Of a stretch of DNA of 64,000 nt, positions 15,550-51,700 are shown piece after piece (the first letter of the stretch is position 1; the number at the start of each line of letters is the position of its first letter). A program made the translations under genes and the position numbers. The DNA is from Mizuhopecten yessoensis. Taxonomy: Eukaryota. The stretch spans positions 3,026 to 67,025 of the forward strand of contig NW_018405113.1 of the NCBI RefSeq assembly GCF_002113885.1, read 5' to 3'. The notes below the pieces were generated by a model. The model was not told the origin of the DNA. It saw nothing but the letters and a program-made list of their open reading frames with translations, and did not search any database.

Positions 15550-15710
15550 ATGGCGGCGGCCATATCAAGGAAGAAAACAAATGCCATGTTTTGTTTACGT
15601 TACGTATTTTCAATTAGTTTCTTGCTGGCAATAAGTCTGCATGGGGGATATTGTGATCAAACACCACAAGACTGTGTTTTTGGTGGCTCAGACTTCTCTT
15701 TGATCAAGCA
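15550..15710 (+). CDS. IGF2R: CI-MPR exon 1 (signal peptide, start of domain 1)
   Basis: atcATGG start, MAAAISRKKTNAMFCLRYVFSISFLLAISLHGGYC; donor gtaagt, phase 2. Confidence 0.88.
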
Positions 15711-30700: not shown

Positions 30701-33700
30701 CCGATTGGCTTAGACCTTTCGGGTTATAGCTTCTGTTCTGCTGGTCTGGTTTTGTTCATACTTGGTGGTTACTGGTGCTGTTAAGATTACATACATGTGA
30801 AAGTCTTCATTATCAATATTTCAGAATCTAAATGAAACACACACAGTCTATAATTTCATCATAGACCAAAAATGTTTTGGTTTTGATAAAACATTAAGAT
30901 GACAGGTACAGAGCCAATTATATTTCAATTGTTTTGCAGTACAACTGTACTAGATTTACCATGGGTTTGTATTTATGAAACCGTTCTCATGCTCAAGTTT
31001 GAACTTTGTGGTCAAACCTTATTTCTTGTTCTGGTTATAACTTAATAGATAAATCTTATTTTGTCAATTATTTGGAAACATTTTGAAGAGACTTAAAGCC
31101 AAATACTGTTGTCAATGTTTACATTTGACTTTTTGATCGTTTGACATGATCTAAGTGAGTTACAAGAAAGTTGGTTTGAGCACAAAATCCATGCTTGAGC
31201 ATGAGAACGGTTTCATGAATACGGGCCCTGTTACAGTTTACCTAATTGTTATGTTTACAGGTGACTGGGCCAAGCACTGTGACAAAGTTAGGTAACTGTG
31301 ATTATGTATACATGTGGGCCACAGAGGCTGCCTGTCCTCTAGAGATGACAGAAGCAACCACCAACTGTTCTGTCAAGGACCGTAACTCTGATTATGTCTT
31401 CAACCTTGGCCTCCTCACCAGAAAGAGTGATACTGACTACTATGACGTCAAGGACGGAGCCTATCAATTCAGAGTGAGTTTCCTTCATTCTCATGTCTCT
31501 CCCCTCCTGTAAATCATTCAAAAACCAAAATGGTGTGGTAGAGATCCCATTCCACGGTCAGTGCTAGGTATCAAGGGTAATAACTCTGCAAAAAACAATC
31601 AGCAGATTGTTTTGTTCGATTTTAATAAACATTCGTCAATTGAATTTGAACACGCATGTAAATTCGGTTATGTAGATATTTGTCTTTTGATATTACTTTA
31701 ACATATCCAATTGCGAACTTCATGTTTGTATTTGTAAACATCATTTCTTGTACAAGTTTACATTTCAGCCTTCTTTGATCTAAAACATATAACTTTTTTT
31801 ATACGTACCACAATTAAATTAAGGGGGGTATACTGGAATCACCCTGTCTGTCTGGTTGTCTGTCTGGATGTCTGTCTGTCGTCCAGAGTAACTTGTCTGC
31901 AAAACTCCATCTTAACTAACAGACAGATTTGATTGAAACTTCACTTGAATAATCAGTATATTATGAAGTTGTGCACTGGCATTTTAATTTCAGATTTCAA
32001 AACTTTTTAAGGGAGTTATGGCCCTTTATGCAAAATAACTTGTCTGGAAACCCCAAGGTCAAGGTCACTAAATGATGTATAAACTACCAACATCTGGGGG
32101 GGGGGTATTAGTTATCCTCAAGATGACAGTTCTAGTTTTTGATTATCCTGAAAGTTAAACATCACTTCTTTAGTCGATGTTATAATGTTATTAAGATCTG
32201 TGTTACAACATTTGACATCATCAACCCTAAGTCATTCTGTACAGAACTGATCACTCCCAATCACAAGGGTATTAGTATCTTCTTTGTTACAATAACCAGT
32301 ATCATGTTTCAGATCAGTATCATCAACCCTAAGTCGCTCTGTATACTACTGATAACTCCCAATCACGAGGGTATTAGTATCTTCTTCTTTGTAACAAAGG
32401 TGCAATCATCCCAGATTGCACACTCCGGAAGTAACTGAAAATCTGTTAAAAATAGCCAAAACCCTGATTTGGTACATCTCCCGCATTGGGGTCGATTTAG
32501 CCCCAGATATTGAAAGTTACCCTTCATTAAACCCTAAAAAATCACCAACTTTACAAAGTATCTCTATTGTTGTTAAGTTCATTGCCAATTTCCCTGGACA
32601 AAATCCCGGTGATTTTTTTTTCACTAATTTGTGATATGGAATGAGGGAGATCTCCCTCATTGGAGGTTTCAGAGGTTGACACCTATGTTGTTACAACAAC
32701 CAGTATCATGTTTCAGATCAACATCTGCGGAGTCATGTCACCGACTCATTGTCCTCATGTGGAGGGTAAGGCTATGTCCTTATGTCGTCTGCTCCCCAAC
32801 TCCTCCACCGAGGGCCTCAGCTTCCTCAAATACACCCTCGACTATGATGACGATGGCAAACTGATGCTGAAATATGAAGGCAAACGACTGGACAGTGGTA
32901 CGGAATCTGACTTAATCATTGAATGGAGAAATTTGGAAACTTTTGTTCAATATCTATATTTGGACCATGGTCTTAGTGATGCCTTGTAAAGTACTGACAG
33001 ACATATATATGAACACTTTGAGGTTTTAGCTGTTTACCAGGAAAGTATTTGTTTGCTTATGCAAAACCAATTCATTGCTTTCCTTGATATGGAATTCTCT
33101 TTTGAACTGTCTTTACAAAAAGTAATGATCAAGTTTTATATATGGCCTCCTTGTGTGGCTTTGAAGAGTTATATAAGCATGGGAAACATACAAAAATGTA
33201 AAGTTCTTGTTCTTCCAGGGATAAGGATAGAGGTCAGGGTTCTGTTCCTCTGCCGACAAAATGTGGATATTGGTGAGCCTAAGTTTGACCGAGTGGACGA
33301 GGGATACAAGTACATATTTACATTTGAGACATCACTAGCGTGTAAACCTGACCCAATAGATTGCTTGGCTGAAGATATCCATGGAAACCGTTTTGACCTG
33401 AGTCCGCTGGCACGTGGTGCCGGCGACACAAACTGGCAGGTGACAGACACTCATAGTGACCATAAAAATACCTATCACATCAATGTTTGTCGACCAATCA
33501 ACACAGCCGGTACCTCCTGCCAAGGTGTGTTAAAAGAACATAAAATGAAACTTAATTTAAGTGTACTGATAGATCTAAATTTTAGAATAGTTCTATTTTT
33601 CTCACTGTTATCGATATATATTTTCTGTCAGAGATAATGGTTTTCTGTAATTTATATTCCATGAGCTGTTCATTTGCTCTGTCAAGTTAAATTTCTTCGC

Positions 33701-36700
33701 ATGAATTCTGGTGAATTTATGAAAGGAATTCACAGGAAATTATATCGCTTAAATGATCTTTTTTAAGGGACATCAAAATGTTTTTGTCTGTTCAACTGAA
33801 CATAATTTTTAATGAATAATATGATTACGTTCTTGAAATTATATAATTAATATACACAGAATTAAGTTATTTATATTAGTCCTGTCTGGTGATTGGTTTG
33901 CAGACATGATGTCATGTGTCATTACTGTTGCCAGGTGGACCAATCGGAGGGTGTGGGGTGTCCAGCATTGGCGATAGCTTCAACATGGGCTACATACATT
34001 CTCAACCCATCGCAGCCGAGGACGGGACCGTCACACTTCACTATCGCAACGGAGACATCTGTAACAAAAACAAAACCAATGAATCCCGATACAGTACAAG
34101 GATTCTGTTCTCCTGCTCAGGGGTTGAGGTAGGTGGTATCCATGACAACAGCTAATGGCTTCTGTGTAGAAGGGGTTCTGGTACATTGTATCCATGAAGG
34201 CAGCAACATCAACTTTCCTTGTGAAGTTTAGAACTTCCTTGTTGGAAGAAGATTGTTTTAGTATTTTAACCCTAAAAGGTTACACATGGCAGATCTAGAT
34301 GCTTTCATTTGTGCCCAACAGGGTTGTAAATAAATTAGTAAACCAATAAGTTTCAAAGTGCTCCAAAACCTCTATGATTTTGCCACAGTAAGTTACATGT
34401 ATTTTTGTTCATGTACTTTTCTTTATAAGGGGAAATTAGTTTCAAATTGTCATTTGTAGCATCATACATGTATGATGTTTTGTGAAAAAAGTAAGTCTTG
34501 TCTTCTGTAGGGTATTCAGCATTTAATAACTTGATAATGCTTTCTCGTCAGATGTTAGACTATATTTGAATAATTATGTTTACTTTAAAGATTTTTGCAA
34601 AGTAAAACTTCACTAATCCAATACAATTTTGGCATTATTATAAAGAGGTTTGGTGATATATTGGGGAGGATATGATAAAAGATTAACCCTTCACAAATGC
34701 TGGTGGAAAACGAGGTGTTTATTTTTGGATTTATACACAACATACAAGATAAAGCGTAAATAATTCTAAAACTGGTTTATTAAAATTTAGTTTCTTGAGT
34801 ATAACAAATCTAAACTGTGGCTCTTCTCACCATTTGATAATCTTTTACATAATAGAAACTAGAAACATAATGCAATGTCACATGCATGTATCTTGTAAAT
34901 TGCACCATTACCAAAAAAAACAATCTTATAGTAAGTAAAAATTAAACTTAAGAAAGTATGCCTTTAAAGAAAGAGTAGTCAACCATTGGAACTCACTGCC
35001 AAACCACGTCGTCACATCACCAACACTAAAAACGTTTGAAGCCCGACTGGATAAGCACTGGGGAAAACCAGAATGCTATTATAACCATGAAATTGATAAT
35101 AATGAACTTATTAACTGTCGGGGTGTCAGCTTAGAGTCTGACGATACACCTGATCTGGATATATAGGCATATGCCTGCGTCCAGTACTATTATATTATAT
35201 ATTATTATATTATATTATTATACCAAATTATCCAATAACTGTGTGATGTTAATAAAAGCCAAGAATAATTATTATCTGAATGGGGAAAAGAATTCCCTTG
35301 AATTCTAATGGCCAAATGAATGAATTTATGCTTGCATAAATGAGCGAGAGCCCCAAGAATTTTGGATACGTTTTAACTATGTGTATTTGTTTTCTCTCCA
35401 GCGCAACCCAACCTTTATGGGCAAGACTGACAGCTGTGAGTACTTGTTCAGCTGGCAGACTCCCTTTGCCTGTCCCATGAAGAAGGTATGCTAAACTGGA
35501 ATTAGCTATAACACACGAAACTTTTTTTATCTAACCATGTTATAAACAAGACAAACAACAAAATAAAGAAATGGTGACAAAAGCAAGTGTTTAGACACTT
35601 AATTGGCTCTGTGTATGACAATACCTCATTATCTTTTACTCGAGATGTTGGTTCATGATTTGAAATAGCAACATTAAGTTCTAAATATACTTATTACTGG
35701 AGTCAACGTTAGTATTATTTAATCGCTGCTGTGCAGTACTAAGTTGTACTGTCAAATAGAAACAATGTCATTTTGAATTGCATTCAAATAGAATTTCATT
35801 CAAAACATGTATGATTAAACTTTGCCTTTCCACCACTGTTGAAAAACAAATTATGATATTTACTCTGATCGCTTTCTTCAAAACATGTTATAAGTCTAAG
35901 GTAAGTTTAACCCTTTCACCACTGTGGACCATAATAGACTCATCCAGATCAATGCATGGTAGAGTTTACTAAAGTTACCTAGGGGTGAAAGGGTTAAAGA
36001 TTATACTGTTACAGTTTACAGTGACAATGAAAAAACCCACAGATGACCTCTGTGTTTAGTACAAGTATGGCGACAAACTTTTGCCTCCTGGTAAACCAGG
36101 CCCGATACAGAAAACAAAGGACCCTGATCTAAAGCTTCTTTGATTTCTTTTAACTATCCATCAATTGATATATGCATTACAGGGGTATATGAATTGTCCC
36201 TAGAAAGTTGTTTTAATTCACACGGTGTGGGATACCAATAGAATCAAGGCATAGGAAAATCTGTAAAAAAGTTGAATAATAGAAAAAAATATTCTGAGTA
36301 TTTAAGGATTGAATTCTGTTTTGTTGAGGTTTATGGGGTATAAACCTCAATTGGTCTTGAGACAAATTTTATGAACTGCAAAGCAAATGGGATTCTATCC
36401 TTATATTTACATTCAGAGCGATATTGATATTTGTTCGGATAATTTCTAAAATTTTGGTCTTGTGCAAGTCTAACACAACAGAAGGTATCAAAACTTATGA
36501 CCTCATCTCTCACTTTGAGACGTCGTCCTGGTAAGATGAATAATCAAATTAAGATGTAAATAATTTTTTTAATTCAATTGAATACTTCTGAAAAAAAAAA
36601 AAAAAAATGAAAACAATCTATGAATGGAACTACTTCCCGCATTCCGCGGAATAACAGAGTAATCAGGTTGATAATATGCTGATGTATTCATACTCCAACT

Positions 36701-39700
36701 GAAAAGTTCATTGAAAAATAACCTTTAAAATGTTTAGTAGGTATATTGAGTCCAAGTTCAGTAGAAATGTAAATATATACATATGAATCATTCGAAAGCT
36801 GCTAAGATGACCAATCACTTCATTAACCAATCAGTGAACAGCTGTACCTAATTTGGGTGACTGACCAGTTATATCCTCCCGTTAACCACTGATTAATGAT
36901 TTCTCCCATTGGTCCTTGTTCTCTCTCAATATCTGAAGGACCTTCTTAGACTGCAAGTCCTTGTACATTAACAACACTCACTCACATCAATCATTCAATT
37001 AAAATAAGCTGTGAGGTGACAAAAAACTTACATCTTAGATAAGATAAGTATAGTCAAATCTGGATTAGGAGACTATCCAAGGGAAGGCTAAAGGTCATCT
37101 ATCAATAGAGTGTTATTATAAACTGCTTAGTGGGGTATACATAGAGAAAATGGTGGTCTCTTGAACACAGATTTGACTGAATTAAAGATAAAGTTAATAT
37201 TAACACAGTAAGACCGTATTCCTTTACTTCTTTGGTTGTAGCCTCATATTGGTTCAGACTGTAAGGTGCAGGATCCACTGGCGACCCACGAGTTTGATCT
37301 GAACCCTTTACGAAAGGCAACAGACTATAAAGTGCCAACACCAGACAACTATTTATACATCTTAAATGTGTGCGGCCCCTTACAGTCCACCACCGCATGT
37401 GGGGCAGACCAAGTCGGTATATGCCAGACCAAGCCCAGTAATGCAAGTTACAAGGTCAATGCAGGTTGGTAAATACTCTTTACCTCTAATTTTAACATTG
37501 TTAAGTTGCTGGAACCCAGCTAAAGTTTAATATGTTGGTAGATTCTGGGATATTGAACTTCGTAAATGAATTTAAATGAAATGAAACAGAAGTTTGTTGA
37601 ATGTTCAGTCATTATCTTGCTGTTTAAAATGGACCAGAATTTTTAAAGGTGAAGGTTGTTGAGTAAGTTGTTAACATGCAAGCTGACATATTTTCCATTT
37701 GTAGGAATGCCTTCCTCGGCTCTGCGCTACCAGACAGGGGTGATCACTCTGAAATATCTCAATGGAAAATCACCCTGCCATGGAAAATACAATCGCAGCA
37801 CCATCATTACGTTTCTATGTGACCACTCTACGAATGGATCAGCAGGACCGGTCTTTATTAAGGAGGAATCCGACTGTACTTACATGTTTGAGTGGAAAAC
37901 CAGTCTTGCTTGCCCTCCGTTTAAAGAAGAAGACTGTAGCATCACTGCCCCAAACCATAACCAGTATGATCTGAGCACGCTCGCCTTGACCAGTGATAAC
38001 TATGACTACCTTGATTATATTCATAATAAAAAGTTCATCATCAACGTATGCCGATCACTCGTCCACAAGAAAGGTACAGCCCTTATAGATCAAGGTTACT
38101 TTTTATAAGACCACAAAGCTAGAGTTCAATGCTATCATGCTGTCTGTCCCTTAACATCAATTTTTCATGAGTTATGCCTCTTTGCAACTTAGATTATTCT
38201 CTTAGCATAATTCTTTCTTGTAAGCACAAATAGAACACATTTTTCAAACCAAAATTAAGAATCTTCATATGTCAATCCAGATCCTGCATCAATTTTTACC
38301 CCCCCCCCCCATGAAAACAGAGAAGTTACAACATGCAATGTTGTAACTTCTCTGTTTTCATGCTCCTTAACACATGTTAAAAATGGCCACCCTGTCTGCT
38401 AAAGGTAACTGAAAAGATAGAGCAATTCCCTCCAATAAGAAATCTCTATTTTCTCATTCACACAAAGCAATTATAGTTATACTTTATTAAGAGACCATTT
38501 TTGTTTTGAGCCTTATAGATATAAACTTTATTTAACAACAATTATGAAACAGGTTATTTCAACTTATACTTATCACTCTTGTTGGCCCGGATGTTAGCGC
38601 ATGGGGGGTCTTAGTGTGGGAGAAAACCGGAGTACCCGGAGAAAACCCACGTGGTCAGGCAGGTGACCCCTACCTTTTCACGTCCGATCGGGAATCGAAC
38701 CCCAGCCGCCTTGGTGAAAAGCAAGTGCGCTATCCACTGCACCACCTGACCACCTGACCACCTGACCACCCTGACCACCACCTGACCACCCAATGAGCCT
38801 TCCCTTGGGTGGTCTATTAATACAGATTCAACTGTAGTTTCTATTATATGAGTATCTGAAAAGCAGGAGGTAATAATATGATTTCTTATAAATCTTTATC
38901 TTATTTGAGAATTTTGTTTCAAATCACATTGTAAATTGTTTTTCCATCAGATAGCTAGCCAGAGTTTTTTTTCTGCTAGCCAAGCATCCATAACACTCTA
39001 TAAAAGATTTTGTAAAGATTGTCCTTAAAAATATTTACAGATTCCTAAATTTTCTAATTACAGATCAGACATGTCCGTACAATGCCGCTGTATGTATGGT
39101 TGACCTGACCCAACAAAACGATACTCTAAGGTAATAATGGTGTCGTCTGCTCCGTATTTCTTCCATACTTATTATGATAAGTGTTGTATTAATATCTAAG
39201 ACAGATAACACTTGTGGTTCATTACTGTCCACCCTGTAATTGCAGGTTCCACAACCTGGGCGAGGTAAACAAGCACCAGGTGATCGTAGATAACGGACAG
39301 CTAGAACTCCATTACACCAATGGTGAACAGTGTTCCTCGGGCGGCAGAACCTCAACACGTATCATCATGTACTGCGACAAAACAACCCTGGTACTGCTTA
39401 TTGTGTTAGGATACTATCACATTATGTGTTAATTCCTATAATGCTATACATGAACTAATTTTCGGCAAAGTTTAATTTCCTTACTGTAGAGTTATGGTTA
39501 CAAACACTGACGCTGACTTTAGATAGGTGTAAAGCACCTACATGATGCAGACTATAATAAGCCTATTACTGAGTGGGATTTTCAGGATGGCGGCATGGGT
39601 ACATTCGCGTATCCGGTTGAAACGGTTGAACCGGTTGAACCTGTAAAGGAAACGACTGGCACAGATCTGGACCGAGGCTGACCTCAGGAAAATTTGGCAT

Positions 39701-42700
39701 GGGTAGATTGAGGGGTCCAGACGAACCTGACCGAAACTAAAATGCTGACTATTGCCAGTTTGTGTTATTTCTTTCTAAAACAATGTCAAGTCACATGTAA
39801 TTTTTAAGATACGTTATGTAATTTAGTGGACGCATGAGAGAAGGGCATAATATTCTTGATACATTGTTTTTTATTCTCCGAAACTGTGGATTTTTAGCTC
39901 TGCTTATAGAACAGTCCAAGTGTGTTCGTTTATTGTGGAAAATTTCTGCGCCCACGTACCGTTTCAACCGGGATACACGAATGTAGCCCATGTGTACCAC
40001 CTTTATATGTTCAGATGAATAAAATGCAGTATTGGATTTAATTGACATGTATTTGTTGAAGGCTTCAATGTTATAACACATTCAAAGTAATGTATTCTCG
40101 AGGATATTTAACGTAACTAATATTCAATTATTAAGTAAGCTCTTGTGTTAAAATATTGAAATAAATAAATTTATTGTCAAATTTCCGCACAAAGGAGCAT
40201 GAAAGTTTGTATTCTGTGAAATGTATTTGATTTGAGACAAATTTGTGAAAGCTTTGCTATTGAAATATTATCATCGGAAAATTCTGCAAATCATAACTTC
40301 ATGTCTGATTTTTGTTTGGTTTGCTATGGCTATAATGTTGAAAACCCTTGATTTCGTAATTGTGTTTAACATATTAATTCAAACAGTTTTCCCATCCGGT
40401 TGGCCATTTTACGGTGAACAATTGCGAGCATGAATTTACCTGGAGTACACAGGCTGCATGTCCCTTAAACACTGACCAAGACAGCGAGCAGACGGGCAAC
40501 TGTACCGCCAGGAATCCAGTCACAGGTAAAACATAGATTTTGTTTGCTTTTGTACAACAGGAAAAGTAAGTGTGGAATTAAATCACCTTTCTTGTAACAG
40601 ATCCTTCTCAACACAGCAGACACAGAACAATAATGATGTACTTCATACAACTTTGTATTTGGAATACAATCAAATCCGTGTATATATGGCTCATAGAGAG
40701 CAAATCAGTCTTTATACAGTCTTATTATGCGTTAACTCATTCACCCCTGAACTTTCATAATCAATTATTCCAACCTTTGAATTGGAAGAGTTCAAATGTG
40801 TCTTCAGGGGTGAATGAGTTAATGTACCTATTTTTTTCACATACATACTTTCCTGAATTGACATTTCCATACCTTTTCCCGAAAAAATCAATTGCATTCA
40901 CATATTTTTCTGTCTTACACTATGTATAAACGATTGTTAGCATGAAACTGAAAATTGGGAACAAAGCAAATTCCCATAGAAATATATGTGTTACATTTTC
41001 GCCAGTGAAATATCAGAAATTAGTTGTTTAATAAAAACATGTACCTGTGAAGATATATGAAAGGTTATATCTTTACATGTCAAGATATCACTTTTGATAT
41101 TGTTCAATCAGAACGGTACTTTCTTTTCACTGCATAGATTTTCAGTTTCAAGTTTAGATGAAGCAATAGAAGAATAAGAGGGTTTGACTCAAGTGACACT
41201 CAAGAACTTATAGATTTTTCCTCCAGAAATTATATTAAATACAAACAAGGTCACTACTGAGAATATATTGTTTCCTCTGTAAGATTCTTTGCCGTTAAGC
41301 AGTGTCATTTTGTTCCACAGGACATGTATTTGACCTCAGTTCCCTAAATAAAGGGACACCTTATAAAATTGACGACCATCGAGGCCACATCTTCAAACTC
41401 AATGTGTGTGGCAAAGTTACTGGCTCCGGATGTGCTGGAGTCTCAGGTGAGTTATAACATCTTAATATATTTTTACTTTATGTAATAAAGAAATAAGATA
41501 GAGCTAAAAAATGTTTTGTTAGATAAACTGTTGATTGCTTGAACCATTTTTAATGTTAAAATGTCCCTGCCGGCAGTAGATTTTCCTATCATTGGGTTTT
41601 TGTGTGAGGTCAGTAGCTTTTATTAACATGACCAGTGCCTATATAAGAATGAATAGAGTCATGTTAAAGTGGGCAGTTTTATGATATTTATGATGTTGTC
41701 AGTTTTGTGTTTTGCCGATATATAATTTATTTGTGATAACGTCACTTAGTTTTTGCTATGGTCAGTGTTATCAGGATAACATGGTTTTGTACTGTGATAG
41801 GTCACTGTTTGATTTGAGTTGTCTATTTCATTACGTGTCAAGTTTTTGCTATGGTCAGTGTTATCACACGGTTTTGTACTGAGAAAGGTCACTGTTTGAT
41901 TTGAGTTGTCTATTTTATTACGTGTCAAGTTTTTGCTATGGTCAGTGTTATCACACGGTTTTGTAGTGAGATAGGTCACTATCTTTGAGTTTGGAACATG
42001 TTTGTGGGTTTTTGAGTTTGGGACATGTTTGTGGGGTCAGTTTTGAGTGGTCCGGTGTCATTTAGAATGGTTATGTAATGCCACCTTTCTGTTAAAGTGG
42101 GAGCCTGCCAGGAAGAAGTGGCCGGAGACAAGAGGAACTTCAGTAGTGGGCTATACAACTCCAAGCTACAGTTTGACAATGGCGTCCTCGTGCTGAACTA
42201 TCATGGTGGTAAAGACTGCCATAATAAAATGTACAAACGCACAACCATCATCAACTTTGTCTGCTCCCAGACAGCCGGTGAGGGTAACCCGGTGTTTATA
42301 GATGAATCAGATGACTGCACTTACTATTTATCTTGGCATACCAGCCTCGCATGTGAAAAAGAGGTAACCAATCAGCACACTTAAACTTTATAAATCAGCC
42401 AATCAAATTGTTTAGTGCTCCAATATACCCTACTCAAAACAATTCTCTGTTCTAAGTTTGAACGAGGAGTGCTTATTCAAGTGTGAGTTTGTTTATACTT
42501 GTCATGTGACAGTTTGATTTAGGAGAGGTATTTGACTGCTCTGAGCTTGATTGAACTTATTATATCATATAGACATGTCAACATTATATAATGTTAATCA
42601 AAATTTGATTTTAATGTACACATTTACTATAATGTTACATTAACTGTACATAGATTACTTTCAACAATTAAGTTATCACTGATTACCTGGCTGTACAGGA

Positions 42701-45700
42701 GTATTCTTCCACGAGTTTAGCTGGTTCTACAGCTTTAGGTGGCTTGATATGTGCTGAAATTTAAACTAGGCTTCAAGTCATTGTTTACGAACATAAATGT
42801 ATATTTTGACACTCTCCAATACATTAATACACTTGCAGGGTTTCTAATTCATTTTCGGGTGTACTAGAATTTGGCAACAATCAATCTCTGTTTTTATAAT
42901 CATATTTATGTTTGGGTTTTCTGATCAGACTAAAAGATTTCACTGTGTATGGATGTTATTTGAGAATCACATGTTTCAAGTTATTTCACAAAAGAAATTT
43001 TGGACAGATTTCATCAAAAAAAACTTTCTCTGTTTTTTTACCAGGTGAAATGTTCTGTTGATGCTGGAAACAGAACTATTGACCTTTCACCTCTGGTCAA
43101 GCCAACTGGAGAGTACTCATCTCTGTCCACTATGAATGGGAAAGATGTCTCGTACTACATTAACATCTGCCGACCTCTGAACCCGATCTACGGAACACTT
43201 TGTCCCCCACAGGCCAGTGCTTGTATGCTACAGCCTGGTGGTAGCCCACAGGTAATACTAACAGGTCAACACCAATGTTGTTATGATCAATTAATGATGG
43301 GTTCCTGTTGATTTTCAGCAGTATTTAACTGTTTAAAAGATGTTTTAAATGTTATGATAATTTTTCAGTTAAACAGGAAGTAAAAATATTTTGTTAATTT
43401 CACCCTTGAAATCAAATTCCAGAGATAAATGCCAGAATAACAAAATTTTGATGAATAGGATCCCCCAGTAACTCACCGTGTGCCCACAGCAAGTTGCTGC
43501 ATTATGTCTTGTCTGTCGTCATACTATTCAATGTCAGTTGTCTAGGTGATTAAAGGAGTGCAATTGTTGGGAACCTTCCAAAAGTTGCCAATGTTGTTAA
43601 AATTTAAAAAATAATTGAATCCTGTGGAAAGTCTCTCCTAATATTTTCAATAGATAATAACAGAAATAAGAAATTAGGGTTTTTATTTTCACATTTTAGG
43701 AGGAGATATTGTGACCATTCCTCTCAAACTAGTGAATCCATTTTGACAGTGTAACCCAGACTGAACTCCAATCATAGTATTCCTCTTATTTGAAGTTCAT
43801 TAAATGAATTAATTGATTTAAGAAACAACTTGAAAACAGCAACACACAATTTTACACATCCTTATATGCAATACTACCATTAGCAATATTGTTTTGACTT
43901 TTATAACTTTACAAAATCCTTTTACTTAGATTATAAGCAGTGAATGAGAGTACCCTGTGTAGGCATATTATTTCATAAGATTATATTATTATTTTTTTAT
44001 CAATTAGCGAGAATTCATTTGTTGAATTTTATTTCATAAACGAGAATCAATCACAACAATATTCAGTGACAGTAAAATAATTCTGTTTTCAGAGTTTGGG
44101 GAAAGTAACTGGTCCTCCAGTGCTGGAGAAAGGAACTGGAAAAGTAACCTTAATTTATGAAGGAGGAGATGTGTGCTCGACAAACCAAGCCAAAAATATG
44201 TCGACTAAAATTGTGTTCGTATGCAACCCAGGAGTGTCCAGAGTGAGTACCAACACGGCAATATCTAAGTTATAACTGATCTGACTTGCCTCACAAGACA
44301 GAAGGAAATCTTGTTCTCGGCATACCTTATAATGTCATTTCTTTCTTTTTGAACAATTAGCAGCTATCATAATTATCCTTGAAATTCCAAGGGTTATGCT
44401 CACGGATGTTCTCTGCACTCCAGGAATATGTCATGACAAAATTAATGTCTCTGTATGTGCCACCATGTGAATGATACAAATAGATTAGCTTAATGTACAT
44501 CATTAGAATGGCAGTGTTTAACTATAAAATTGACAGGTTTTGAATCTGATTTTAATGTACACATGTACTATAATATTACATTAACTGTACATAGATTACT
44601 TTCAACAATTTAGTTATCACTGATTACCTGGCTGTACAGGAGTATTCTTCCACGAGTTTAGCTGGTTCTACAGCTTTAGGTGGCTTGATATGTGCTGAAA
44701 TTTAAACTAGGCTTCAAGTCATTATTGACGAACATAAATTTATATGTTGACACTCATCAATACATTAATACACTTGCATGGTTTCTACTTCATTTTCAAG
44801 AGATCTAGGTTTTGGCAACAATCAAGGGTTATGCTCACGGATGTTCTCTGCACTCAAGGAATATGTCATGACAAAATTAAAGTCTCTGTATGTGCCACCA
44901 TGTGAATGATACAAATAGATTAGTTTGATCCTTTAATGTACATCTAAAGAATGGCAGTGTTTAACTGTAACATGGACTGGCATTGAAGTCGTGTATTGCT
45001 TCTCTGTAATCCTCAGAAGGCAGGTATCAGCCTAGCGATAAATCCCTTCAATCAAATCGCCTTCAGATTTGTCATGACATATGCCAGGGGCCAGGAGAAC
45101 CCTGCTGTTGATGAATATATATAAGTTTGGAATGCGACAATCTGAAAAACAGAAAACACAATTATAAAATTGGTGTGTTTAATCTGTAACTTATCAACAA
45201 AGCTAGCCCTGTAATGTAGACATCTAGTTTACTATTCTTTTACATCAAGGTAAGGGGGGGGGGGGGGCAGCCAAATGGCCTCTGCATGGAGANGACCATA
45301 ATACCATTCATAGTAGGTATTTTACAAGTGTCCTTAGTGCAGTACTGCAGAACTCTTTTAAAAGGATATACTTGCCAAATTTAGATAACGTATGTCTGGT
45401 GTCGTTTATGTCAGGATTCAATGTGATATGCTGACGGTGACTGTTATAACTTTTATTACTTTTTTTCATTCATCAAGTCTGGCCCGGTACTACAGGAAGT
45501 GTCGGACTGCCAGTATGTGTTTGTATGGGACACCTCTGTTGTCTGTAGTCAAGACGACACCAATCTACAGCCAGTGGCCAATCAGGATTGTTCTTACAAA
45601 GACGCTCAAACTGGCAACACCTACAACCTTACATACTTCAAAACTTTACAGAAAAGAGAACCAGTGAGTAATTAACGTAGTCGACGTTTGGTAATTTACT

Positions 45701-48700
45701 TGATTGATTGATTGGTTTTACGTCCACTTCACTACCGAGTAGTTTGGTGATCCAGCAGATGTAGAAAAGCAAGGAAAATGAGTAGAAGGGATAAAGTATG
45801 TAGTGAAAGAATAGAAAGGGGAGACAGGGGAGAGAAGGAGCCGTCTATCCTATATGTATTTATGTTCATGAATTTAATTTTTTCCTAGGCCTAATGTTTG
45901 CCTTAACCTAGGTAATGTACAGATCCACTTCAAATAAATACCACTGTGTGCTTATGTACAGTCATATATAGCAGTCAAATCTGGTAAGATACAAATCTAC
46001 TAGAAATAATTACCAGTGTGTTACAATAATTATACATAGTTGTCATAGTTTGGTAACATACAAACTACTACCACTGTGCTTGTGTAAAGTAATATATAGC
46101 TGTTGAAGTTCTATGATATACAACCACTACAAATCCATACCACTGTGTGCTTGTGTACAGTAATATATAGCAGTCAAATCTGGTAAGATACAAACTTGCT
46201 ACAAATAATTACCTGTGTGCTTGTTTATATATAATGGTCTTACTTCCATTTGACTATACATGCTGAAGGCATGTTGCTGTGATAATTCAAATAGTTAAAC
46301 ATCACTTTTTGTTTATTTTTTATTGAAACAGATGAAAAAAAATGGTTTCTCATATTCAATCAACGTTTGTGATAAAGTGGAGACAGCATTACCTGGATGT
46401 GAGACAGCTGGTGTTTGTCGGACCAATAATACGAGAGGGGTCTCCTACGGCAGTGTCGCCCACAGAACTGTGTCAAAGACAGGCAAAGTCATCCAGCTAA
46501 CATACACACAGGGCGATACTTGTGGTGGTTAGTTTCTTTGTAATTAATAGCAAAATGTGAAAATTGGTAAATTGCAGATATGTTTTTTAAACAAAATAAA
46601 GGATCCCTGTGCCACTGCACTGGAGTTTTCCTATATACAGTAACCTCCCTTTAACTTATGTTTGGATGTAGCTGTAGTACATGTACAGTTGGACCGCGAT
46701 GCCTCACTCACACTCACTGGTAGCTGAATCAGTTAGAGTGATGGTAAGATTCATATCTCGGTCTAGCACCGCTGAAGCTTTACACAAGTCTCGCAAAGTA
46801 TGGTTTTCTTTTCATAAATGATTTGGTAAAGCTTAAGTCATGCCTGAAAAAAGTTCCCAATTTTGTTGTTACAGTTTTGGCTGTGATACGGGGAATCCTT
46901 TAATGCTTTCACTTACTTCGGATTGAAAATATGAAATATCGTAAAAAGTAATAAATACTGGCATTGACCAATGATTCCTTGTAATTCAATGGGAAAGCGA
47001 AAGTAAGAATTATATTATACATTATGCTAGATGTCCATGCTCCTTGATTAACTGTCGCTACTGATATTTGTTTATCTTCCAGAGAATAGAAAGCGGGAGA
47101 GTGTGATCACTTTTGACTGTGATACATCTGGCAAAGTCGGCCAACCCAAGTATACCTATGTAAGTACCTCATCTCGTTATCTAACCAAGTACGCCTTTCT
47201 ACATACTTTCTATATTCATGTTACCAGAAATGTCCTTGATACATGTACATGTAAGAAATGTATACAGGGAAATTTTCACTGTAGCTTTGACCTTTTTCGC
47301 CCTCCAAAATGTGGGTTAATTTACCATAACAGTTGATGTAATATTAAAACACAGTATACAGTATATTGAAATTACATATAAAGGGCAAAATGAGCACTGG
47401 GTGATTCTGGTTTTCACTGATAAGGGGGTAAAACTTCCCCACTTTACGCTGTCTCTTTACTTTAGTCTGTTCCATATATCTCACAGCCTTGCTTTCTGCA
47501 CATGTGTAGAAATGACAGCTCATTTCTGACATGGCGGCTTTCTTTGACAAAGGGTTATTTGCAAGTTTTGTGTTGGAGAAAAATAATCAATAATTACTGT
47601 ATAATTCAGGTAGGAAAATCTCCACCTTTGAGTTAAGATTTTAACTGTTGAGACCTTGGCAGAGCCTCTGTGGTGAAACAGTAAATATCCTATAGGTTGA
47701 GATTTTCCCTTCTGCATTATACAGTGTCATTTTATACATAAGAAGTAAGCTCTATATATATTTATAGAGGTAATGTTGTATGTTTTATAGGCCGGTCAGT
47801 GTCATTCTATACATGAGAAGTAAGCTCTATATATATTTATAGCGGTAATGTTGTATGTTTTATAGGCCGGTCAGTGTCATTCTATACATAAGAAGTAAGC
47901 TCTATATATATTTATAGAGGTAATGTTGTATGTTTTATAGGCCGGTCAGTGTCATTCTATACATAAGAAGTAAGCTCTATATATATTTATAGAGGTAATG
48001 TTGTATGTTTTATAGGCCGGTCAGTGTCATTCTATACATAAGAAGTAAGCTCTATATATATTTATAGAGGTAATGTTGTATGTTTTATAGGCCGGTCAGT
48101 GTCATTCTATACATAAGAAGTAAGCTCTATATATATTTATAGAGGTAATGTTGTATGTTTTATAGGCCGGTCAGTGTCATTCTATACATAAGAAGTAAGC
48201 TCTATATATATTTATAGAGGTAATGTTGTATGTTTTATAGGCCGGTCAGTGTCATTCTATACATAAGAAGTAAGCTCTATATATATTTATAGAGGTAATG
48301 TTGTATGTTTTATAGGCCGGTCAGTGTCATTCTATACATAAGAAGTAAGCTCTATATATATTTATAGAGGTAATGTTGTATGTTTTATAGGCCGGTCAGT
48401 GTCATTCTATACATAAGAAGTAAGCTCTATATATATTTATAGAGGTAATGTTGTATGTTTTATAGGCCGGTCAGTGTCATTCTATACATAAGAAGTAAGC
48501 TCTATATATATTTATAGAGGTAATGTTGTATGTTTTATAGGCCGGTCAGTGTCATTCTATACATAAGAAGTAAGCTCTATATATATTTATAGAGGTAATG
48601 TTGTATGTTTTATAGGCCGGTCAGTGTCATTCTATACATAAGAAGTAAGCTCTATATATATTTATAGAGGTAATGTTGTATGTTTTATAGGCCGGTCAGT

Positions 48701-51700
48701 GTCATTCTATACATAAGAAGTAAGCTCTATATATATTTATAGAGGTAATGTTGTATGTTTTATAGGCCGGTCAGTGTCATTCTATACATAAGAAGTAAGC
48801 TCTATATATATTTATAGAGGTAATGTTGTATGTTTTATAGGCCGGTCAGTGTCATTCTATACATAAGAAGTAAGCTCTATATATATTTATAGAGGTAATG
48901 TTGTATGTTTTATAGGCCGGTCAGTGTCATTCTATACATAAGAAGTAAGCTCTATATATATTTATAGAGGTAATGTTGTATGTTTTATAGGCCGGTCAGT
49001 GTCATTCTATACATAAGAAGTAAGCTCTATATATATTTATAGAGGTAATGTTGTATGTTTTATAGGCCGGTCAGTGTCATTCTATACATAAGAAGTAAGC
49101 TCTATATATATTTATAGAGGTAATGTTGTATGTTTTATAGGCCGGTCAGTGTCATTCTATACATAAGAAGTAAGCTCTATATATATTTATAGAGGTAATG
49201 TTGTATGTTTTCTAGGCCGGTCAGTGTCAGGCCCTGTTTTACTGGCGGACGTGTGTGGTGTGTCCCAAAGTGGCTGATGCGTGCTCACTTGGCTACAATT
49301 ACAAAAGCTATGATCTAAGTATGTTGTCAAGTGAAACTGGTGGCTGGAATCTCACTGACGCCAAGGGAAACAGGTGAGGTCAAGGTCATCCCGAACCAAA
49401 AGTCTTATTGCAAAATATTTTACAAAATTTAGGTATGAACATATTTCCTAAATGTAAAACACATCATTTGTGTAAAAACTTACTCTCCGCATTGCATGTC
49501 ATTGAATTTTCACAAAGAATTTTAATTCAGAAAACGAAAAACAATATTATACATGTACATCAAGTCTATAAATGTATTTGAATAAATATTGGCCATAGTT
49601 GTTGTAGTTGACTCTCAATTGTTAAAAAATATGTAAAATATAGAAATTACTTATAGATATTTTGGAGTATTATGCTATAATAAATAAGAATGGTCCTATT
49701 ACTTTGTGTTGGTACAATTACAGTTGAAGCTTACAAACTTTTAAATTTACTTGTCTGGAAAAATTGGTGTCCACTTGGTTGTTATTTTAGAAAATGAGGG
49801 TGTTTTCATTATATATGAGAGTATCTTAATTGTCTTAAAAAAACAGATACTGGATCAACATATGTCAATCAGTGAACAATGGCCCCACAGACTCTGAGGA
49901 GTGCCCACACATGGTGGCAGCCTGGCGACAGACTCCCAGTGGACTGGTGGACAGATTAGGGCTAATCAGCACACAGAAACTCACCATGGACAGTAAGTAG
50001 AACTTAAACAGACAAGTGCTTGTCAGTATAGAGAAACTCACCATACAGGACAGATGGACACAAGGCTTGTTAGTACACACGCACTGAGTGTGTTCGTTTC
50101 TATATGTTATTAAGCCCATGCCTCATAGTCATAAAAAGCCAACCCATATGCAGTAACGTAGAAATGCCAAAAAAGATAAGTTTATTTGCCTGTAATAACC
50201 CAATCCCCCTAGTCAGAGATCATGTGTTGGTCTCCTGTACTTATAGGATAAAATATAAATAATTAATAGGCTTAATAGGCATGAAGAGATGAAGACAATA
50301 ATGTTACCAGGATTGGCCCAGGTGTCTGGCCCCACTACAGGATTATTACATCAGGTATATCAGTAATAACTGACACAGTGATTCACTGGGATATGTAGCC
50401 CTGTAATAGGGCTACATTCGCGTATCCCGGTTGAAACGGTACGTGTGGCGCAGAAATTTTCCACGATAAACGAACACACTTGGACCGTTCTATAAGCAGA
50501 GCTAAAAATCCACAGTTTCGGAGAATAAAAAACAGTGTTTCAAGAATATTATGACCTTTTTTCATCCGTCCATTGAATTACATAACGTATCTTAAAAACT
50601 ACATGTGACTTGACATTGTTTTAGAAAGAAATAACACAAATTGGCAATAGTCAGCATTTTAGTTTCGGTCAGGCACGTCTGGACCCCTCAATCTACACGT
50701 GCCAAATTTTCCTGAGATCAGCCTATGTCCAGATCTGTACCTGTCGTTTTCTTTACTGGTTCAACCGTTTCAACCGGTAACACGAATGTACCCTAGGTGT
50801 TTAAAAGGTTTCTAAGGTCAAGGTTACTGTAACTGGGAAACAAAAAGGTTTCTAAGGTCAAGGTCACTGTAACTGGGAAACAAAAACATGCATGCAGGAG
50901 GGGTTATGGTTGAGTTGTCATTGTTCTAGTATTCAGGAAGAATGAAGCTGCATAGGTTCATTTAAAAAAGATTTGTGTGATATAAGCCCCATGGGTTTTT
51001 TCTCATTTTAATCCAACTGCTACATGTACACATAAAGAAAATTGCAGAATTATAAGTTTGTTGTATAAGTTTTAAACTGGGGGGTTTTCTGATAGAATTA
51101 ATGTATAGGTTTGAAGTTGGTTATATGGGCTGATATAGTTGGTTATTTAGGTTTTAAGCTGGTTATTTGGGCTGATATAACCTGTGTTCAATGTTCTCCC
51201 CACCTTGGGCACAGAGAATACTACACTGAGACTGGTTATATAAGCCCATAAAACATGTTTGCATGGTGTCTATAAATGTAGTTGTTTATAAATATATATC
51301 ATATTTAATGTTGTGTTTATGTTTTTAGCTGATGAGAAGACACTGATTCTACAGTACTTCCAGGGTGACACAGCTTGTTCTAACACAAAGCGACGAAGTG
51401 ACAACTCTCATGCCCAAACCTTGATCAAGTTTGTGTGTGGAAATACTGTCGGAGGCCCGGTTTTCATTGAAAGGTTAGTCAAGTATATATTACATATTTA
51501 CTAACACTTTGGGTATTGGAAAGAGACCATAGTGGCCATAGTCTACACTGATTGCCATACCTACAGAGGTGTTTCAAAGGATCCTAATCTTATACACGTA
51601 TTTCCTCTACAGGGCTACTGTGTTGTAACCATTGGTTAGCGCGGATGGGAAGCATGCGATTTGTGATTTATGAAAGTGATAGAGTATTCATCATAGACAT

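What the first reader, a model, noticed from the sequence alone, without database searches (positions are those of the whole stretch)
40497..42363. Domain 11, the mammalian IGF2-binding domain, carries an intact M6P-binding Q-R-E-Y signature
Seen: counting MRH repeats from the N-terminus gives exactly 15. The four signature residues are complete in domain 3 (AACQ / PRTT / KEVNDSCIY), 5 (GVCQ / PRKT / SESSWGY), 9 (GICQ / NRST / KEESDCTY) and also 11 (GACQ / KRTT / DESDDCTY); no other domain has all four. Domain 11 is very like domain 9 (CHNKMYKRTTIINFVC vs CHGKYNRSTIITFLC). Established: in mammals Gln-Arg-Glu-Tyr defines the sugar sites of domains 3, 5 and 9, while domain 11 lacks it and binds IGF2. 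Inference: this invertebrate receptor has a fourth full phosphomannosyl site, and the IGF2 pocket may have evolved from a lectin pocket.
Basis: partly seen in the sequence, partly recalled or inferred. Interest (0 to 1): 0.8.

Follow-up and report, generated by a model that had tools for sequence, protein, structure and literature searches.

The report
Scallop receptor keeps ancestral sugar pocket
In the Yesso scallop's lysosomal-enzyme receptor, the eleventh repeat (the one that binds the growth factor IGF2 in mammals) still has all the sugar-binding residues, as it does in most invertebrates including amphioxus and a coral, so the mammalian IGF2 pocket was probably remodelled from an old sugar pocket.

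Summary
[quoted passage not shown] Gln-Arg-Glu-Tyr is complete in repeats 3, 5, 9 and 11 only. RNA contigs and reads join the three repeat-11 exons exactly as modelled.

In a domain tree, scallop repeat 11 groups with repeat 11 of 16 other animals, vertebrates included (UFBoot 99 / SH-aLRT 94). A scallop-specific copy of repeat 9 is rejected (p-AU 0.027). Two broader alternatives are disfavoured but not rejected (p 0.17 and 0.076).

The trait is not special to scallops. Repeat 11 has the full signature in bivalves, abalone, octopus, a nemertean, chelicerates, echinoderms, hemichordates, amphioxus and a coral. It is lost in Ciona and in all vertebrates, which share R→H, Y→H and a one-residue insertion.

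The four lectin positions align with primate F1567, Y1606, L1629/D1630 and L1636, in the IGF2-binding domain.

So the reading is supported at sequence level: an ancestral domain-9-type sugar site in repeat 11, later rebuilt. Sugar binding itself is untested. I found no paper reporting this, but much of the relevant literature was not searchable.

The parts
15550..61184 (+). Whole CI-MPR gene: 42 exons, 2413 aa. It has a signal peptide, 15 MRH repeats, a transmembrane segment, and a tail ending in the acidic-cluster dileucine motif DDSDVDLLE.
   Evidence: Exon model; 15 repeats; 2412/2414 identical to Mizuhopecten yessoensis protein P0294; sequence
40387..40525 (+). Exon 24: end of repeat 10 (..WSTQAAC) and start of repeat 11 (..GNCTARNPVT, which carries the d11-specific NPxTG motif from about 40497).
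   Evidence: RNA joint 40525|41321; motif
41321..41446 (+). Exon 25: the N-terminal strands of repeat 11 (GHVFDLSSLNKGTPYKIDDHRGHIFKLNVCGKVTGSGCAGVS).
   Evidence: RNA joints on both sides
42098..42363 (+). Exon 26: the C-terminal two thirds of repeat 11, carrying the whole lectin signature.
   Evidence: Pfam CIMR PF00878, E 1.5e-14; RNA joints
42109..42111 (+). Gln codon (GACQ). Q1622 of the model, Q1623 of P0294. Aligns with F1567 of primate domain 11.
42220..42222 (+). His codon directly after the loop-C Cys (DCH). This is the domain-9-type extra residue.
42238..42240 (+). Arg codon (KRTT). Aligns with Y1606 of primate domain 11.
42304..42306 (+). Glu codon (IDES). Aligns with L1629/D1630 of primate domain 11, where Ciona and vertebrates have a one-residue insertion.
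42322..42324 (+). Tyr codon (DCTY). Aligns with L1636 of primate domain 11.
37242..38073 (+). Its intron lies after the CQ motif, whereas in repeat 11 the intron lies before it.
21864..24182 (+). Exons 6-8: repeat 3 signature (AACQ, PRTT, KEVNDSCIY).
25656..28289 (+). Exons 11-12: repeat 5 signature (GVCQ, PRKT, SESSWGY).

Best explanation
The window encodes the Yesso scallop CI-MPR. Its 11th MRH repeat is the true orthologue, by position and by phylogeny, of vertebrate domain 11. It keeps the ancestral carbohydrate-recognition site: Gln, Arg, Glu and Tyr, plus the His that follows the loop-C cysteine, and the loop-C/loop-D disulfide pair. This is the make-up of the high-affinity mannose-6-phosphate site of domain 9.

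The most likely function is a further phosphomannosyl-binding site. With domains 3, 5 and 9 it would raise the receptor's avidity for lysosomal hydrolases that it carries from the trans-Golgi network and cell surface to endosomes.

This state is ancestral for animals, being present from coral to amphioxus. The site was disabled in the common stem of tunicates and vertebrates. The same four positions later became hydrophobic (F1567, Y1606, L1629, L1636) in the domain that binds IGF2 in mammals.

Shown here: the gene model, its expression and splicing, the residues, the fold model, orthology, taxonomic distribution and the residue-by-residue correspondence. Inferred: sugar binding, phosphate specificity and the avidity role.
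For: Gene and residues.

Expression and splicing of the three d11 exons.

Orthology:
- Every domain index forms its own clade across 19 species.
- The d11 clade has SH-aLRT 84 in the first IQ-TREE run.
- With amphioxus and coral added it has UFBoot 99 / SH-aLRT 94 and appears in 100% of 200 bootstrap trees.
- A scallop d9+d11 clade is rejected, ΔlnL 35.9, p-AU 0.027.
- Window d11 averages 49% identity to invertebrate d11 against 37% to their d9, and 37% to vertebrate d11 against 33% to their d9.
- d9-d11 identity within the scallop is 39%, no higher than in octopus (39), Glandiceps (43) or Tachypleus (41).
- The motifs NPx[TS]G and xWHTxxxCE occur almost only in d11: 27/42 and 25/42 invertebrates, 13/14 and 14/14 vertebrates.
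- The d9 and d11 introns lie on opposite sides of the CQ motif.

Distribution: full QREY at d11 in 10 bivalves, Haliotis, Octopus, Lineus, spider, scorpion, horseshoe crabs, 8 echinoderms, 2 hemichordates, amphioxus and the coral Oculina.

Conservation: Q34 H30 R40 E27 Y38 of 40.

Fold: pLDDT 90.1. Best matches are human domain 9 (Z 22.2, rmsd 1.4 Å over 136 residues) and human domain 11 (Z 21.3).

Mapping onto IGF2-domain residues.

Mollusc and starfish CI-MPRs are reported to sort lysosomal enzymes (PMC11541866, citing Nadimpalli & Amancha 2010).
Against: - No binding data exist for any invertebrate domain 11.
- QREY is shared by MRH lectins that bind unphosphorylated mannose, so phosphate specificity is not proven. 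That the His is essential in domain 9 is my recollection of Hancock et al. 2002, not a tool result.
- Two broader AU tests did not reach significance: scallop d11 with all d9, p 0.169, and all invertebrate d11 with all d9 excluding vertebrate d11, p 0.076. Domain-level orthology therefore rests on the ML tree, bootstrap, motifs and colinearity, not on formal rejection of every alternative.
- The site was lost repeatedly: unionid mussels, most gastropods (Glu lost), Tubulanus, ticks, Lingula, Saccoglossus. It is therefore dispensable in some lineages.
- The C-terminal exon alone scores higher against bovine domain 9 (61 bits) than against domain 11 (34 bits).
- The AlphaFold model has no ligand, and its pocket geometry could not be measured here.
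Confidence: 0.7

Rival explanations
1. Repeat 11 is a lineage-specific duplicate or gene-conversion product of repeat 9 in scallops, so its lectin signature says nothing about the ancestry of vertebrate domain 11.
For: Exon 26 scores best against bovine domain 9 (61 bits against 34 for domain 11). The AU test of scallop d11 plus all d9 was not rejected (p 0.169).
Against: - The scallop d9+d11 clade is rejected (p-AU 0.027).
- The d11 clade including vertebrates has UFBoot 99 / SH-aLRT 94.
- d9-d11 identity is 39% in scallop, the same as in octopus, sea stars and horseshoe crab.
- The same QREY d11 is present in at least six other phyla.
- d11-specific motifs are shared with vertebrates.
- Intron positions differ between d9 and d11.
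Confidence: 0.03
2. The pocket is functional but is not a classical high-affinity M6P site. It binds another mannose-type ligand, such as unphosphorylated high-mannose glycans as OS-9 does, or the Man-P-GlcNAc phosphodiester as domains 5 and 15 do. Alternatively it binds M6P only weakly.
For: Q, R, E and Y contact the mannose ring in all MRH lectins, and phosphate contacts come from other loop residues (established knowledge of the family). Loop C of d11 is one residue longer than in d9. Structural matches also include domain 5.
Against: d11 has the Cys-His of loop C and the C-x-Y of loop D as in domain 9, not the Cys-less loop D of domain 5. The closest solved structure is human domain 9 (rmsd 1.4 Å).
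Confidence: 0.2
3. The four residues are a conserved structural relic with no ligand-binding role in the scallop. For example, the pocket may be buried against a neighbouring domain.
For: The site has been lost many times without loss of the receptor. In bovine receptor structures a sugar pocket can be occluded by neighbouring domains (PMC7481795, on domain 9).
Against: All of Q, H, R, E and Y are retained across lineages that split more than 500 million years ago, at frequencies close to those of domain 9. In lineages that lost one residue, other residues decay too, as in vertebrates, Ciona, Lymnaea and Physella. That is the pattern expected when a functional constraint is released.
Confidence: 0.07

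Closest known systems
Domain 9 of mammalian CI-MPR/IGF2R (high-affinity M6P site; PDB 6z30, 6z32)
   Same: Gln, His (after the loop-C Cys), Arg, Glu and Tyr sit at the same aligned positions. Same cysteine pattern. It is the best structural match to the model (Z 22.2, rmsd 1.4 Å over 136 residues).
   Different: It is not the orthologue: d9 and d11 form separate clades. Identity is only 33-39%. Loop C is one residue longer in scallop d11. The intron lies on the other side of the CQ motif.
Domain 11 of vertebrate CI-MPR/IGF2R (IGF2-binding in therian mammals; PDB 1e6f, 2v5p, 2l29)
   Same: Orthologous repeat: the 11th of 15, in the same clade, with shared NPxTG and SWHTxLACE motifs. Same fold (Z 21.3, rmsd 1.4 Å over 129 residues).
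   Different: All four lectin residues are replaced. Q becomes I/V in fishes and birds and F1567 in mammals. R becomes H, then Y1606. E becomes S/F/V, then L1629, with a one-residue insertion. Y becomes H/F/S, then L1636. The loop-C His is lost, and the CD loop is about six residues shorter in mammals. Nothing here suggests that the scallop domain binds an insulin-like peptide.
[quoted passage not shown]
   Same: It is the same gene: 2412/2414 identical to the window model. d11 is identical. The other scallops also have QREY at d3, 5, 9 and 11.
   Different: The public records give only an automatic name. No domain-level annotation of binding sites was seen.
Domains 5 and 15 of vertebrate CI-MPR (low-affinity / phosphodiester-preferring sites)
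   Same: MRH repeats that carry all or most of the signature: d5 QREY, d15 Q-V-E-Y.
   Different: d5 lacks the loop-D cysteine. Scallop d15 lacks the signature altogether (LVRH). Scallop d11 is built like d9.
MRH lectins of the ER (OS-9, glucosidase II beta, XTP3-B)
   Same: The same Q/R/E/Y mannose-binding quartet on the same fold. They appear as distant structural matches, Z 9-11.
   Different: They are single-domain proteins that bind unphosphorylated mannose. They are a reminder that QREY alone does not prove phosphate recognition.

Membership tests
[quoted passage not shown] | About 15 contiguous MRH (CIMR, PF00878) repeats in the lumenal part | tested here: met
   15 profile hits tile residues 35-2284. 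Pfam CIMR on exon 26 and on d11.
[quoted passage not shown] | Type I membrane protein: signal peptide, one transmembrane segment, and a cytosolic tail with an acidic-cluster dileucine sorting motif | tested here: met
   Read directly from the model: a hydrophobic N-terminus, TIGTVMAVFSSAILVCVLLIVF, and a tail ending DDSDVDLLE. No dedicated predictor was run.
[quoted passage not shown] | Gln-Arg-Glu-Tyr in domains 3, 5 and 9 | tested here: met
[quoted passage not shown] | One-to-one orthology of each repeat with vertebrate repeats | tested here: met
   Each domain index forms its own clade across 19 species. The exceptions are a few long-branch tick and Ciona repeats.
[quoted passage not shown] | Fibronectin type II insert in domain 13 | tested here: not met
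   No insert in the model. PF00040 is listed only for vertebrate hits. This is a vertebrate addition, not a defining feature of the wider family.
[quoted passage not shown] | Cation-independent binding of M6P-bearing hydrolases | not testable with these tools
   Reported for mollusc and starfish receptors in the literature cited by PMC11541866. Not measured for this protein.
M6P-binding MRH domain of the domain-9 type (applied to repeat 11) | Gln, Arg, Glu, Tyr at the four mannose-contacting positions | tested here: met
M6P-binding MRH domain of the domain-9 type (applied to repeat 11) | His directly after the loop-C Cys, and a Cys two residues before the Tyr (the loop C-loop D disulfide pair) | tested here: met
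   DCH and DCTY are present. The His is conserved in 30/40 invertebrate d11, 34/40 invertebrate d9 and 14/14 vertebrate d9. That the His is essential is recalled from Hancock et al. 2002, not checked here.
M6P-binding MRH domain of the domain-9 type (applied to repeat 11) | MRH flattened beta-barrel fold | tested here: met
   AlphaFold2 pLDDT 90.1. Z 22.2 to human domain 9.
M6P-binding MRH domain of the domain-9 type (applied to repeat 11) | Measured, M6P-inhibitable glycan binding | not testable with these tools
   Needs expression and binding assays.
IGF2-binding domain 11 of therian mammals | Orthology to vertebrate domain 11 | tested here: met
   AU tests of two broader alternatives were inconclusive.
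IGF2-binding domain 11 of therian mammals | Hydrophobic binding-site residues (F1567, Y1606, L1629, L1636 and the short CD loop with I1572) | tested here: not met
   The scallop has Q, R, E and Y at those positions and a longer CD loop. It should not be filed as an IGF2-binding domain.

The most novel reading that the evidence does not exclude
The ancestral animal CI-MPR carried five domain-9-like sugar sites, in repeats 3, 5, 8, 9 and 11. The site in repeat 11 was switched off once, in the common stem of tunicates and vertebrates after amphioxus split off. Shared R→H, Y→H and a one-residue insertion mark this event. The vacated pocket was then rebuilt stepwise into the hydrophobic IGF2 pocket of mammals: Q→I/V→F1567, R→H→Y1606, E→S/F/V→L1629, Y→H/F/S→L1636. 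If so, a growth-factor site at the centre of genomic-imprinting theory is a recycled lectin site, and invertebrate receptors bind hydrolases with higher valency than the mammalian one.
Probability: 0.55. Interest if true: 0.7.

Novelty: new variant of a known kind. Interest (0 to 1): 0.6.

Why it matters
Domain 11 of IGF2R is the textbook case of a new ligand-binding function. IGF2 capture is linked to the evolution of imprinting and to fetal growth control. Structural work showed that IGF2 sits where other MRH domains hold sugar.

What was missing was a direct ancestor state. Here, the orthologous domain of scallop, amphioxus, echinoderms, chelicerates and a coral still has the complete lectin residues. 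The loss is dated to the tunicate-plus-vertebrate stem, and each lectin position is mapped onto a residue of the mammalian IGF2-binding domain.

This makes an old question directly testable. One can express invertebrate domain 11 and measure M6P binding, and then walk the replacements.

It also predicts that invertebrate CI-MPRs have four or five sugar sites (d3, 5, 9 and 11, plus d8 in many). This bears on how lysosomal-enzyme sorting works outside vertebrates, and on engineering M6P-binding modules.

Tried and rejected
1. A scallop-specific duplicate or conversion of domain 9 was rejected.

2. Two broader AU tests were run and came out non-significant: scallop d11 with all d9, p 0.169, and invertebrate d11 with all d9, p 0.076. 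They are reported as inconclusive, not as support.

3. The first 'careful' tree of 95 rows did not finish in time, so the quick tree was used. A smaller, better-sampled set was then run to completion. Its bootstrap had not fully settled (correlation 0.95).

4. Seven literature searches found no paper noting a lectin signature in invertebrate domain 11. Williams et al. 2012 (PMC4658703) and Frago et al. 2016 (PMC4878476) are not held. Nadimpalli & Amancha 2010 is not searchable. Prior notice therefore cannot be excluded.

5. I tried to confirm the list of IGF2-contact residues from held papers and found nothing. Which residues contact IGF2 is therefore from memory. The numbering itself was checked on the colobus sequence via I1572, F1567 and Y1542.

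6. Pocket geometry could not be measured, because the model's coordinates are not exposed.

7. The joined (spliced) protein was assembled only inside scripts, from window coordinates. Searches used exon 26 by reference and public proteins by id.

8. The three single N positions (3493, 25852, 45293) lie outside the exons and were left alone.

Full report
WHAT IS IN THE WINDOW

The window is eukaryotic DNA with 33-40% G+C. It carries one large gene on the + strand.

Using the closest database protein (P0004, Ylistrum balloti CI-MPR-like) as a guide, I chained tblastn matches and refined every junction to GT-AG sites. The result is a 42-exon model. It runs from the ATG at 15550 to the last codon at 61181, followed by TGA, and encodes 2413 residues without a stop.

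[quoted passage not shown] The single difference lies at the exon 5/6 junction. The window is therefore Yesso scallop, and the gene is already annotated automatically.

The joined protein was built only inside scripts, from window coordinates. No joined sequence was given to a search tool.

CHECK OF THE OBSERVATION

A profile made from the window's own repeats finds exactly 15 MRH repeats tiling residues 35-2284.

Reading the four profile columns that hold Gln, Arg, Glu and Tyr in repeats 3, 5 and 9 gives QREY in repeats 3, 5, 9 and 11 and in no other. Repeat 8 reads GYKY and repeat 15 reads LVRH.

Repeat 11 is encoded by three pieces:
- the end of exon 24 (40387-40525),
- exon 25 (41321-41446),
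- exon 26 (42098-42363).

The four codons lie at 42109-42111 (Q), 42238-42240 (R), 42304-42306 (E) and 42322-42324 (Y). Pfam calls exon 26 a CIMR repeat.

An RNA-library contig joins 40525|41321 and 41446|42098, and another RNA contig joins 42363|43045. Raw RNA reads from other studies support the last two joints. The domain is therefore expressed and spliced as modelled.

Vertebrate receptors in the same table have QREY in repeats 3, 5 and 9, Q-V-E-Y in repeat 15, and nothing of the kind in repeat 11. This agrees with the literature statement that IGF2 binds domain 11 and M6P binds domains 3, 5 and 9 (PMC6684648 abstract).

IS REPEAT 11 THE ORTHOLOGUE OF VERTEBRATE DOMAIN 11, OR A COPY OF DOMAIN 9?

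The C-terminal exon alone scores best against bovine domain 9: 61 bits, against 47 for d3, 46 for d5, 38 for d10 and 34 for d11. That is what prompts the worry. Over the whole domain the picture reverses:
- Window d11 averages 49% identity to d11 of twelve non-pectinid invertebrates, against 37% to their d9.
- It averages 37% to vertebrate d11, against 33% to vertebrate d9.
- Identity between d9 and d11 inside one species is 39% in the scallop. It is the same or higher in octopus (39), Glandiceps (43), Acanthaster (39) and Tachypleus (41). So there is no sign of recent conversion.

The trees agree:
- A FastTree of all 15 repeats from 19 species recovers every repeat index as its own clade. For d11 this is 18 of 19 rows, support 0.89, and the tick is the long-branch exception.
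- An IQ-TREE run under a site-heterogeneous model on d3, 5, 8, 9 and 11 recovers all 19 d11 rows as one clade (SH-aLRT 84).
- With amphioxus and a coral added (17 species; d3, 5, 9, 11), the finished search gives the d11 clade UFBoot 99 / SH-aLRT 94, and it appears in all 200 bootstrap trees examined.

The AU tests give a mixed result:
- A scallop-only d9+d11 clade is rejected (ΔlnL 35.9, p 0.027).
- Scallop d11 joined to all d9 is worse but not rejected (ΔlnL 13.6, p 0.169).
- All invertebrate d11 joined to all d9, with vertebrate d11 outside, is worse but not rejected (ΔlnL 15.7, p 0.076). With 145 columns, this is the limit of what the domain alone can say.

Independent characters point the same way:
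- The motif NPx[TS]G near the first strand occurs in d11 of 27/42 non-vertebrates and 13/14 vertebrates.
- The motif xWHTxxxCE at the end occurs in d11 of 25/42 non-vertebrates and 14/14 vertebrates.
- Both motifs occur almost nowhere else, and the window has both.
- The intron inside the domain lies before the CQ motif in d11 but after it in d9.

I conclude that repeat 11 is the orthologue of vertebrate domain 11.

HOW WIDESPREAD IS IT?

The trait is not a scallop peculiarity. I segmented about 90 receptors with the same profile.

A complete QREY in repeat 11 is found in:
- ten bivalves (four scallops, Mytilus, Dreissena, Mercenaria, Pinctada, Mya, Mactra),
- the abalone Haliotis, Octopus and the nemertean Lineus,
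- the spider Nephila, the scorpion Centruroides, and the horseshoe crabs Tachypleus and Limulus,
- eight echinoderms,
- the hemichordates Glandiceps and Ptychodera,
- amphioxus (P0383),
- the coral Oculina (P0407).

It is incomplete in:
- unionid mussels (LRDY),
- most gastropods (Glu replaced),
- Tubulanus, ticks, Lingula (QRDF), Saccoglossus (QRDY),
- Ciona (LHDH),
- every vertebrate: IHSH in sharks and ray-finned fishes, FYLL in mammals.

In 40 non-vertebrate receptors with 15 clean repeats, the d11 columns read Q 34, R 40, E 27 and Y 38. For d9 they read 37, 38, 37 and 40.

A fifth residue, the His immediately after the loop-C cysteine, is present in 30/40 invertebrate d11, 34/40 invertebrate d9 and 14/14 vertebrate d9. 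Vertebrate d3 has Ser there. From memory of Hancock et al. 2002, that His is essential in domain 9. So invertebrate d11 is built like the high-affinity domain-9 site.

Repeat 8 also reads QREY in most molluscs, nemerteans, echinoderms, hemichordates and the coral. Scallops, arthropods, amphioxus and vertebrates have lost it.

WHEN WAS IT LOST, AND WHAT REPLACED IT?

Alignment A1 shows the order of replacement at each lectin position:
- Q is replaced by I or V in sharks, sturgeon, lungfish, caecilian and bird, and by F in echidna, marsupial, deer and monkey.
- R is replaced by H, then Y.
- E is replaced by S, F or V, then L.
- Y is replaced by H, F or S, then L or I.

On the colobus sequence (2491 aa), the motif search places I1572, F1567 and Y1542 at the residue numbers that I recall for the human IGF2-contact residues. 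On that numbering the four lectin positions are F1567, Y1606, L1629/D1630 and L1636.

I recall from the IGF2R literature that F1567 and L1629 contact IGF2. I could not retrieve a held paper listing the contacts.

Ciona and the shark share His at the Arg position, His at the Tyr position, and a one-residue insertion just before the loop-D cysteine. Amphioxus has none of these. The simplest reading is a single loss in the stem of tunicates plus vertebrates. Only one tunicate was sampled.

STRUCTURE

An AlphaFold2 model of the window's domain 11 (P0294:1554-1707, identical to the window) was built with alignment A1. It has mean pLDDT 90.1 and the expected all-beta architecture.

Foldseek ranks human domains 9-10 first (6z30, rmsd 1.5 Å), followed by other sugar-binding CI-MPR fragments and then domain-11 structures. 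The second-look aligner gives Z 22.2 for human domain 9 (residues 1225-1364, 136 aligned, rmsd 1.4 Å) and Z 21.3 for human domain 11 (129 aligned, rmsd 1.4 Å).

The fold is thus intact and compatible with either relative.

MECHANISM AND RIVALS

Most likely (about 0.7), domain 11 of the scallop receptor is a working carbohydrate-recognition domain of the domain-9 type. It would add a fourth phosphomannosyl site and hence avidity for multiply phosphorylated hydrolases. The receptor also keeps the transmembrane segment and the DDSDVDLLE sorting tail needed for Golgi-endosome cycling.

Rivals:
- The pocket binds a different mannose-type ligand or binds weakly (about 0.2), because QREY alone contacts mannose and not phosphate.
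- The residues are a silent relic (about 0.07).
- Repeat 11 is a copy of domain 9 (about 0.03).

Repeated losses in gastropods, unionids, ticks and chordates show that the site is dispensable in some settings. Where one residue goes, the others tend to follow, which is what release from a functional constraint looks like.

NOVELTY

The gene is known and annotated. The idea that IGF2 binds where MRH domains hold sugar is old.

What I did not find in seven full-text searches is any of the following:
- a statement that invertebrate domain 11 keeps the complete lectin signature,
- the dating of its loss to after the amphioxus split,
- the position-by-position mapping onto the IGF2-domain residues.

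Key subscription papers could not be read, so prior notice cannot be excluded. I class the finding as a new variant of a known kind, of moderate-to-good interest. It turns a long-standing evolutionary question into a simple binding experiment.

Noticed in passing
window 33219-35485 (repeat 8, exons 17-19): Scallops have lost the lectin signature of repeat 8 (GYKY). Most other bivalves, octopus, nemerteans, echinoderms, hemichordates and a coral read QREY there, so many invertebrate CI-MPRs appear to have five full sites.
   Followed up: partly
window 40731-40823 (intron 24): A stretch of about 90 bp is covered hundreds of times in every RNA run, and the reads run on into unrelated sequence on both sides. 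It is a dispersed, transcribed repeat. A similar piece translates alike at 22251-22409, in another intron.
   Followed up: partly
window 41720-41990 (intron 25): About three tandem copies of a unit of roughly 66 bp (..gtcactgtttgatttgagttgtctatt..gctatggtcagtgttatca..) lie between the two main exons of repeat 11.
   Followed up: no
window 56560-57600 (intron 38): A long, very regular minisatellite with a 36-bp period reads as repeated HLSYLSTSLHRL in one frame. It sits directly after the exon that ends at 56558.
   Followed up: no
window 2815-4850, + strand: Two long open frames (238 and 453 aa, interrupted by the single N at 3493) lie upstream of the receptor gene and have no Pfam match above threshold. 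They look like a separate, uncharacterised gene.
   Followed up: partly
proteins P0001, P0005, P0019 (unnamed transcript or metagenome proteins) and choanoflagellate receptors P0013, P0014, P0016: Some non-animal or unidentified CI-MPR-like proteins read QREY in most repeats: 15 of 17 in P0001 and 11 of 15 in P0005. This suggests that the ancestral multi-repeat receptor was lectin-active almost throughout and that animals progressively silenced repeats.
   Followed up: no
window 46332-49373 (repeat 13) and vertebrate hits: The scallop repeat 13 has no fibronectin type II insert. Among the hits listed, PF00040 appears only in vertebrate receptors, though some teleost isoforms lack it.
   Followed up: partly
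protein P0295 (Lingula anatina, 3344 aa): The brachiopod model has 22 repeats, with the block d4-d8 appearing twice in the same order. This is either a real internal duplication or an assembly or annotation artefact.
   Followed up: no
window 20863/21864 (exon 5/6 junction): My model and the public protein differ by one residue here (P against RA). This suggests alternative use of neighbouring splice sites, or a modelling choice.
   Followed up: no
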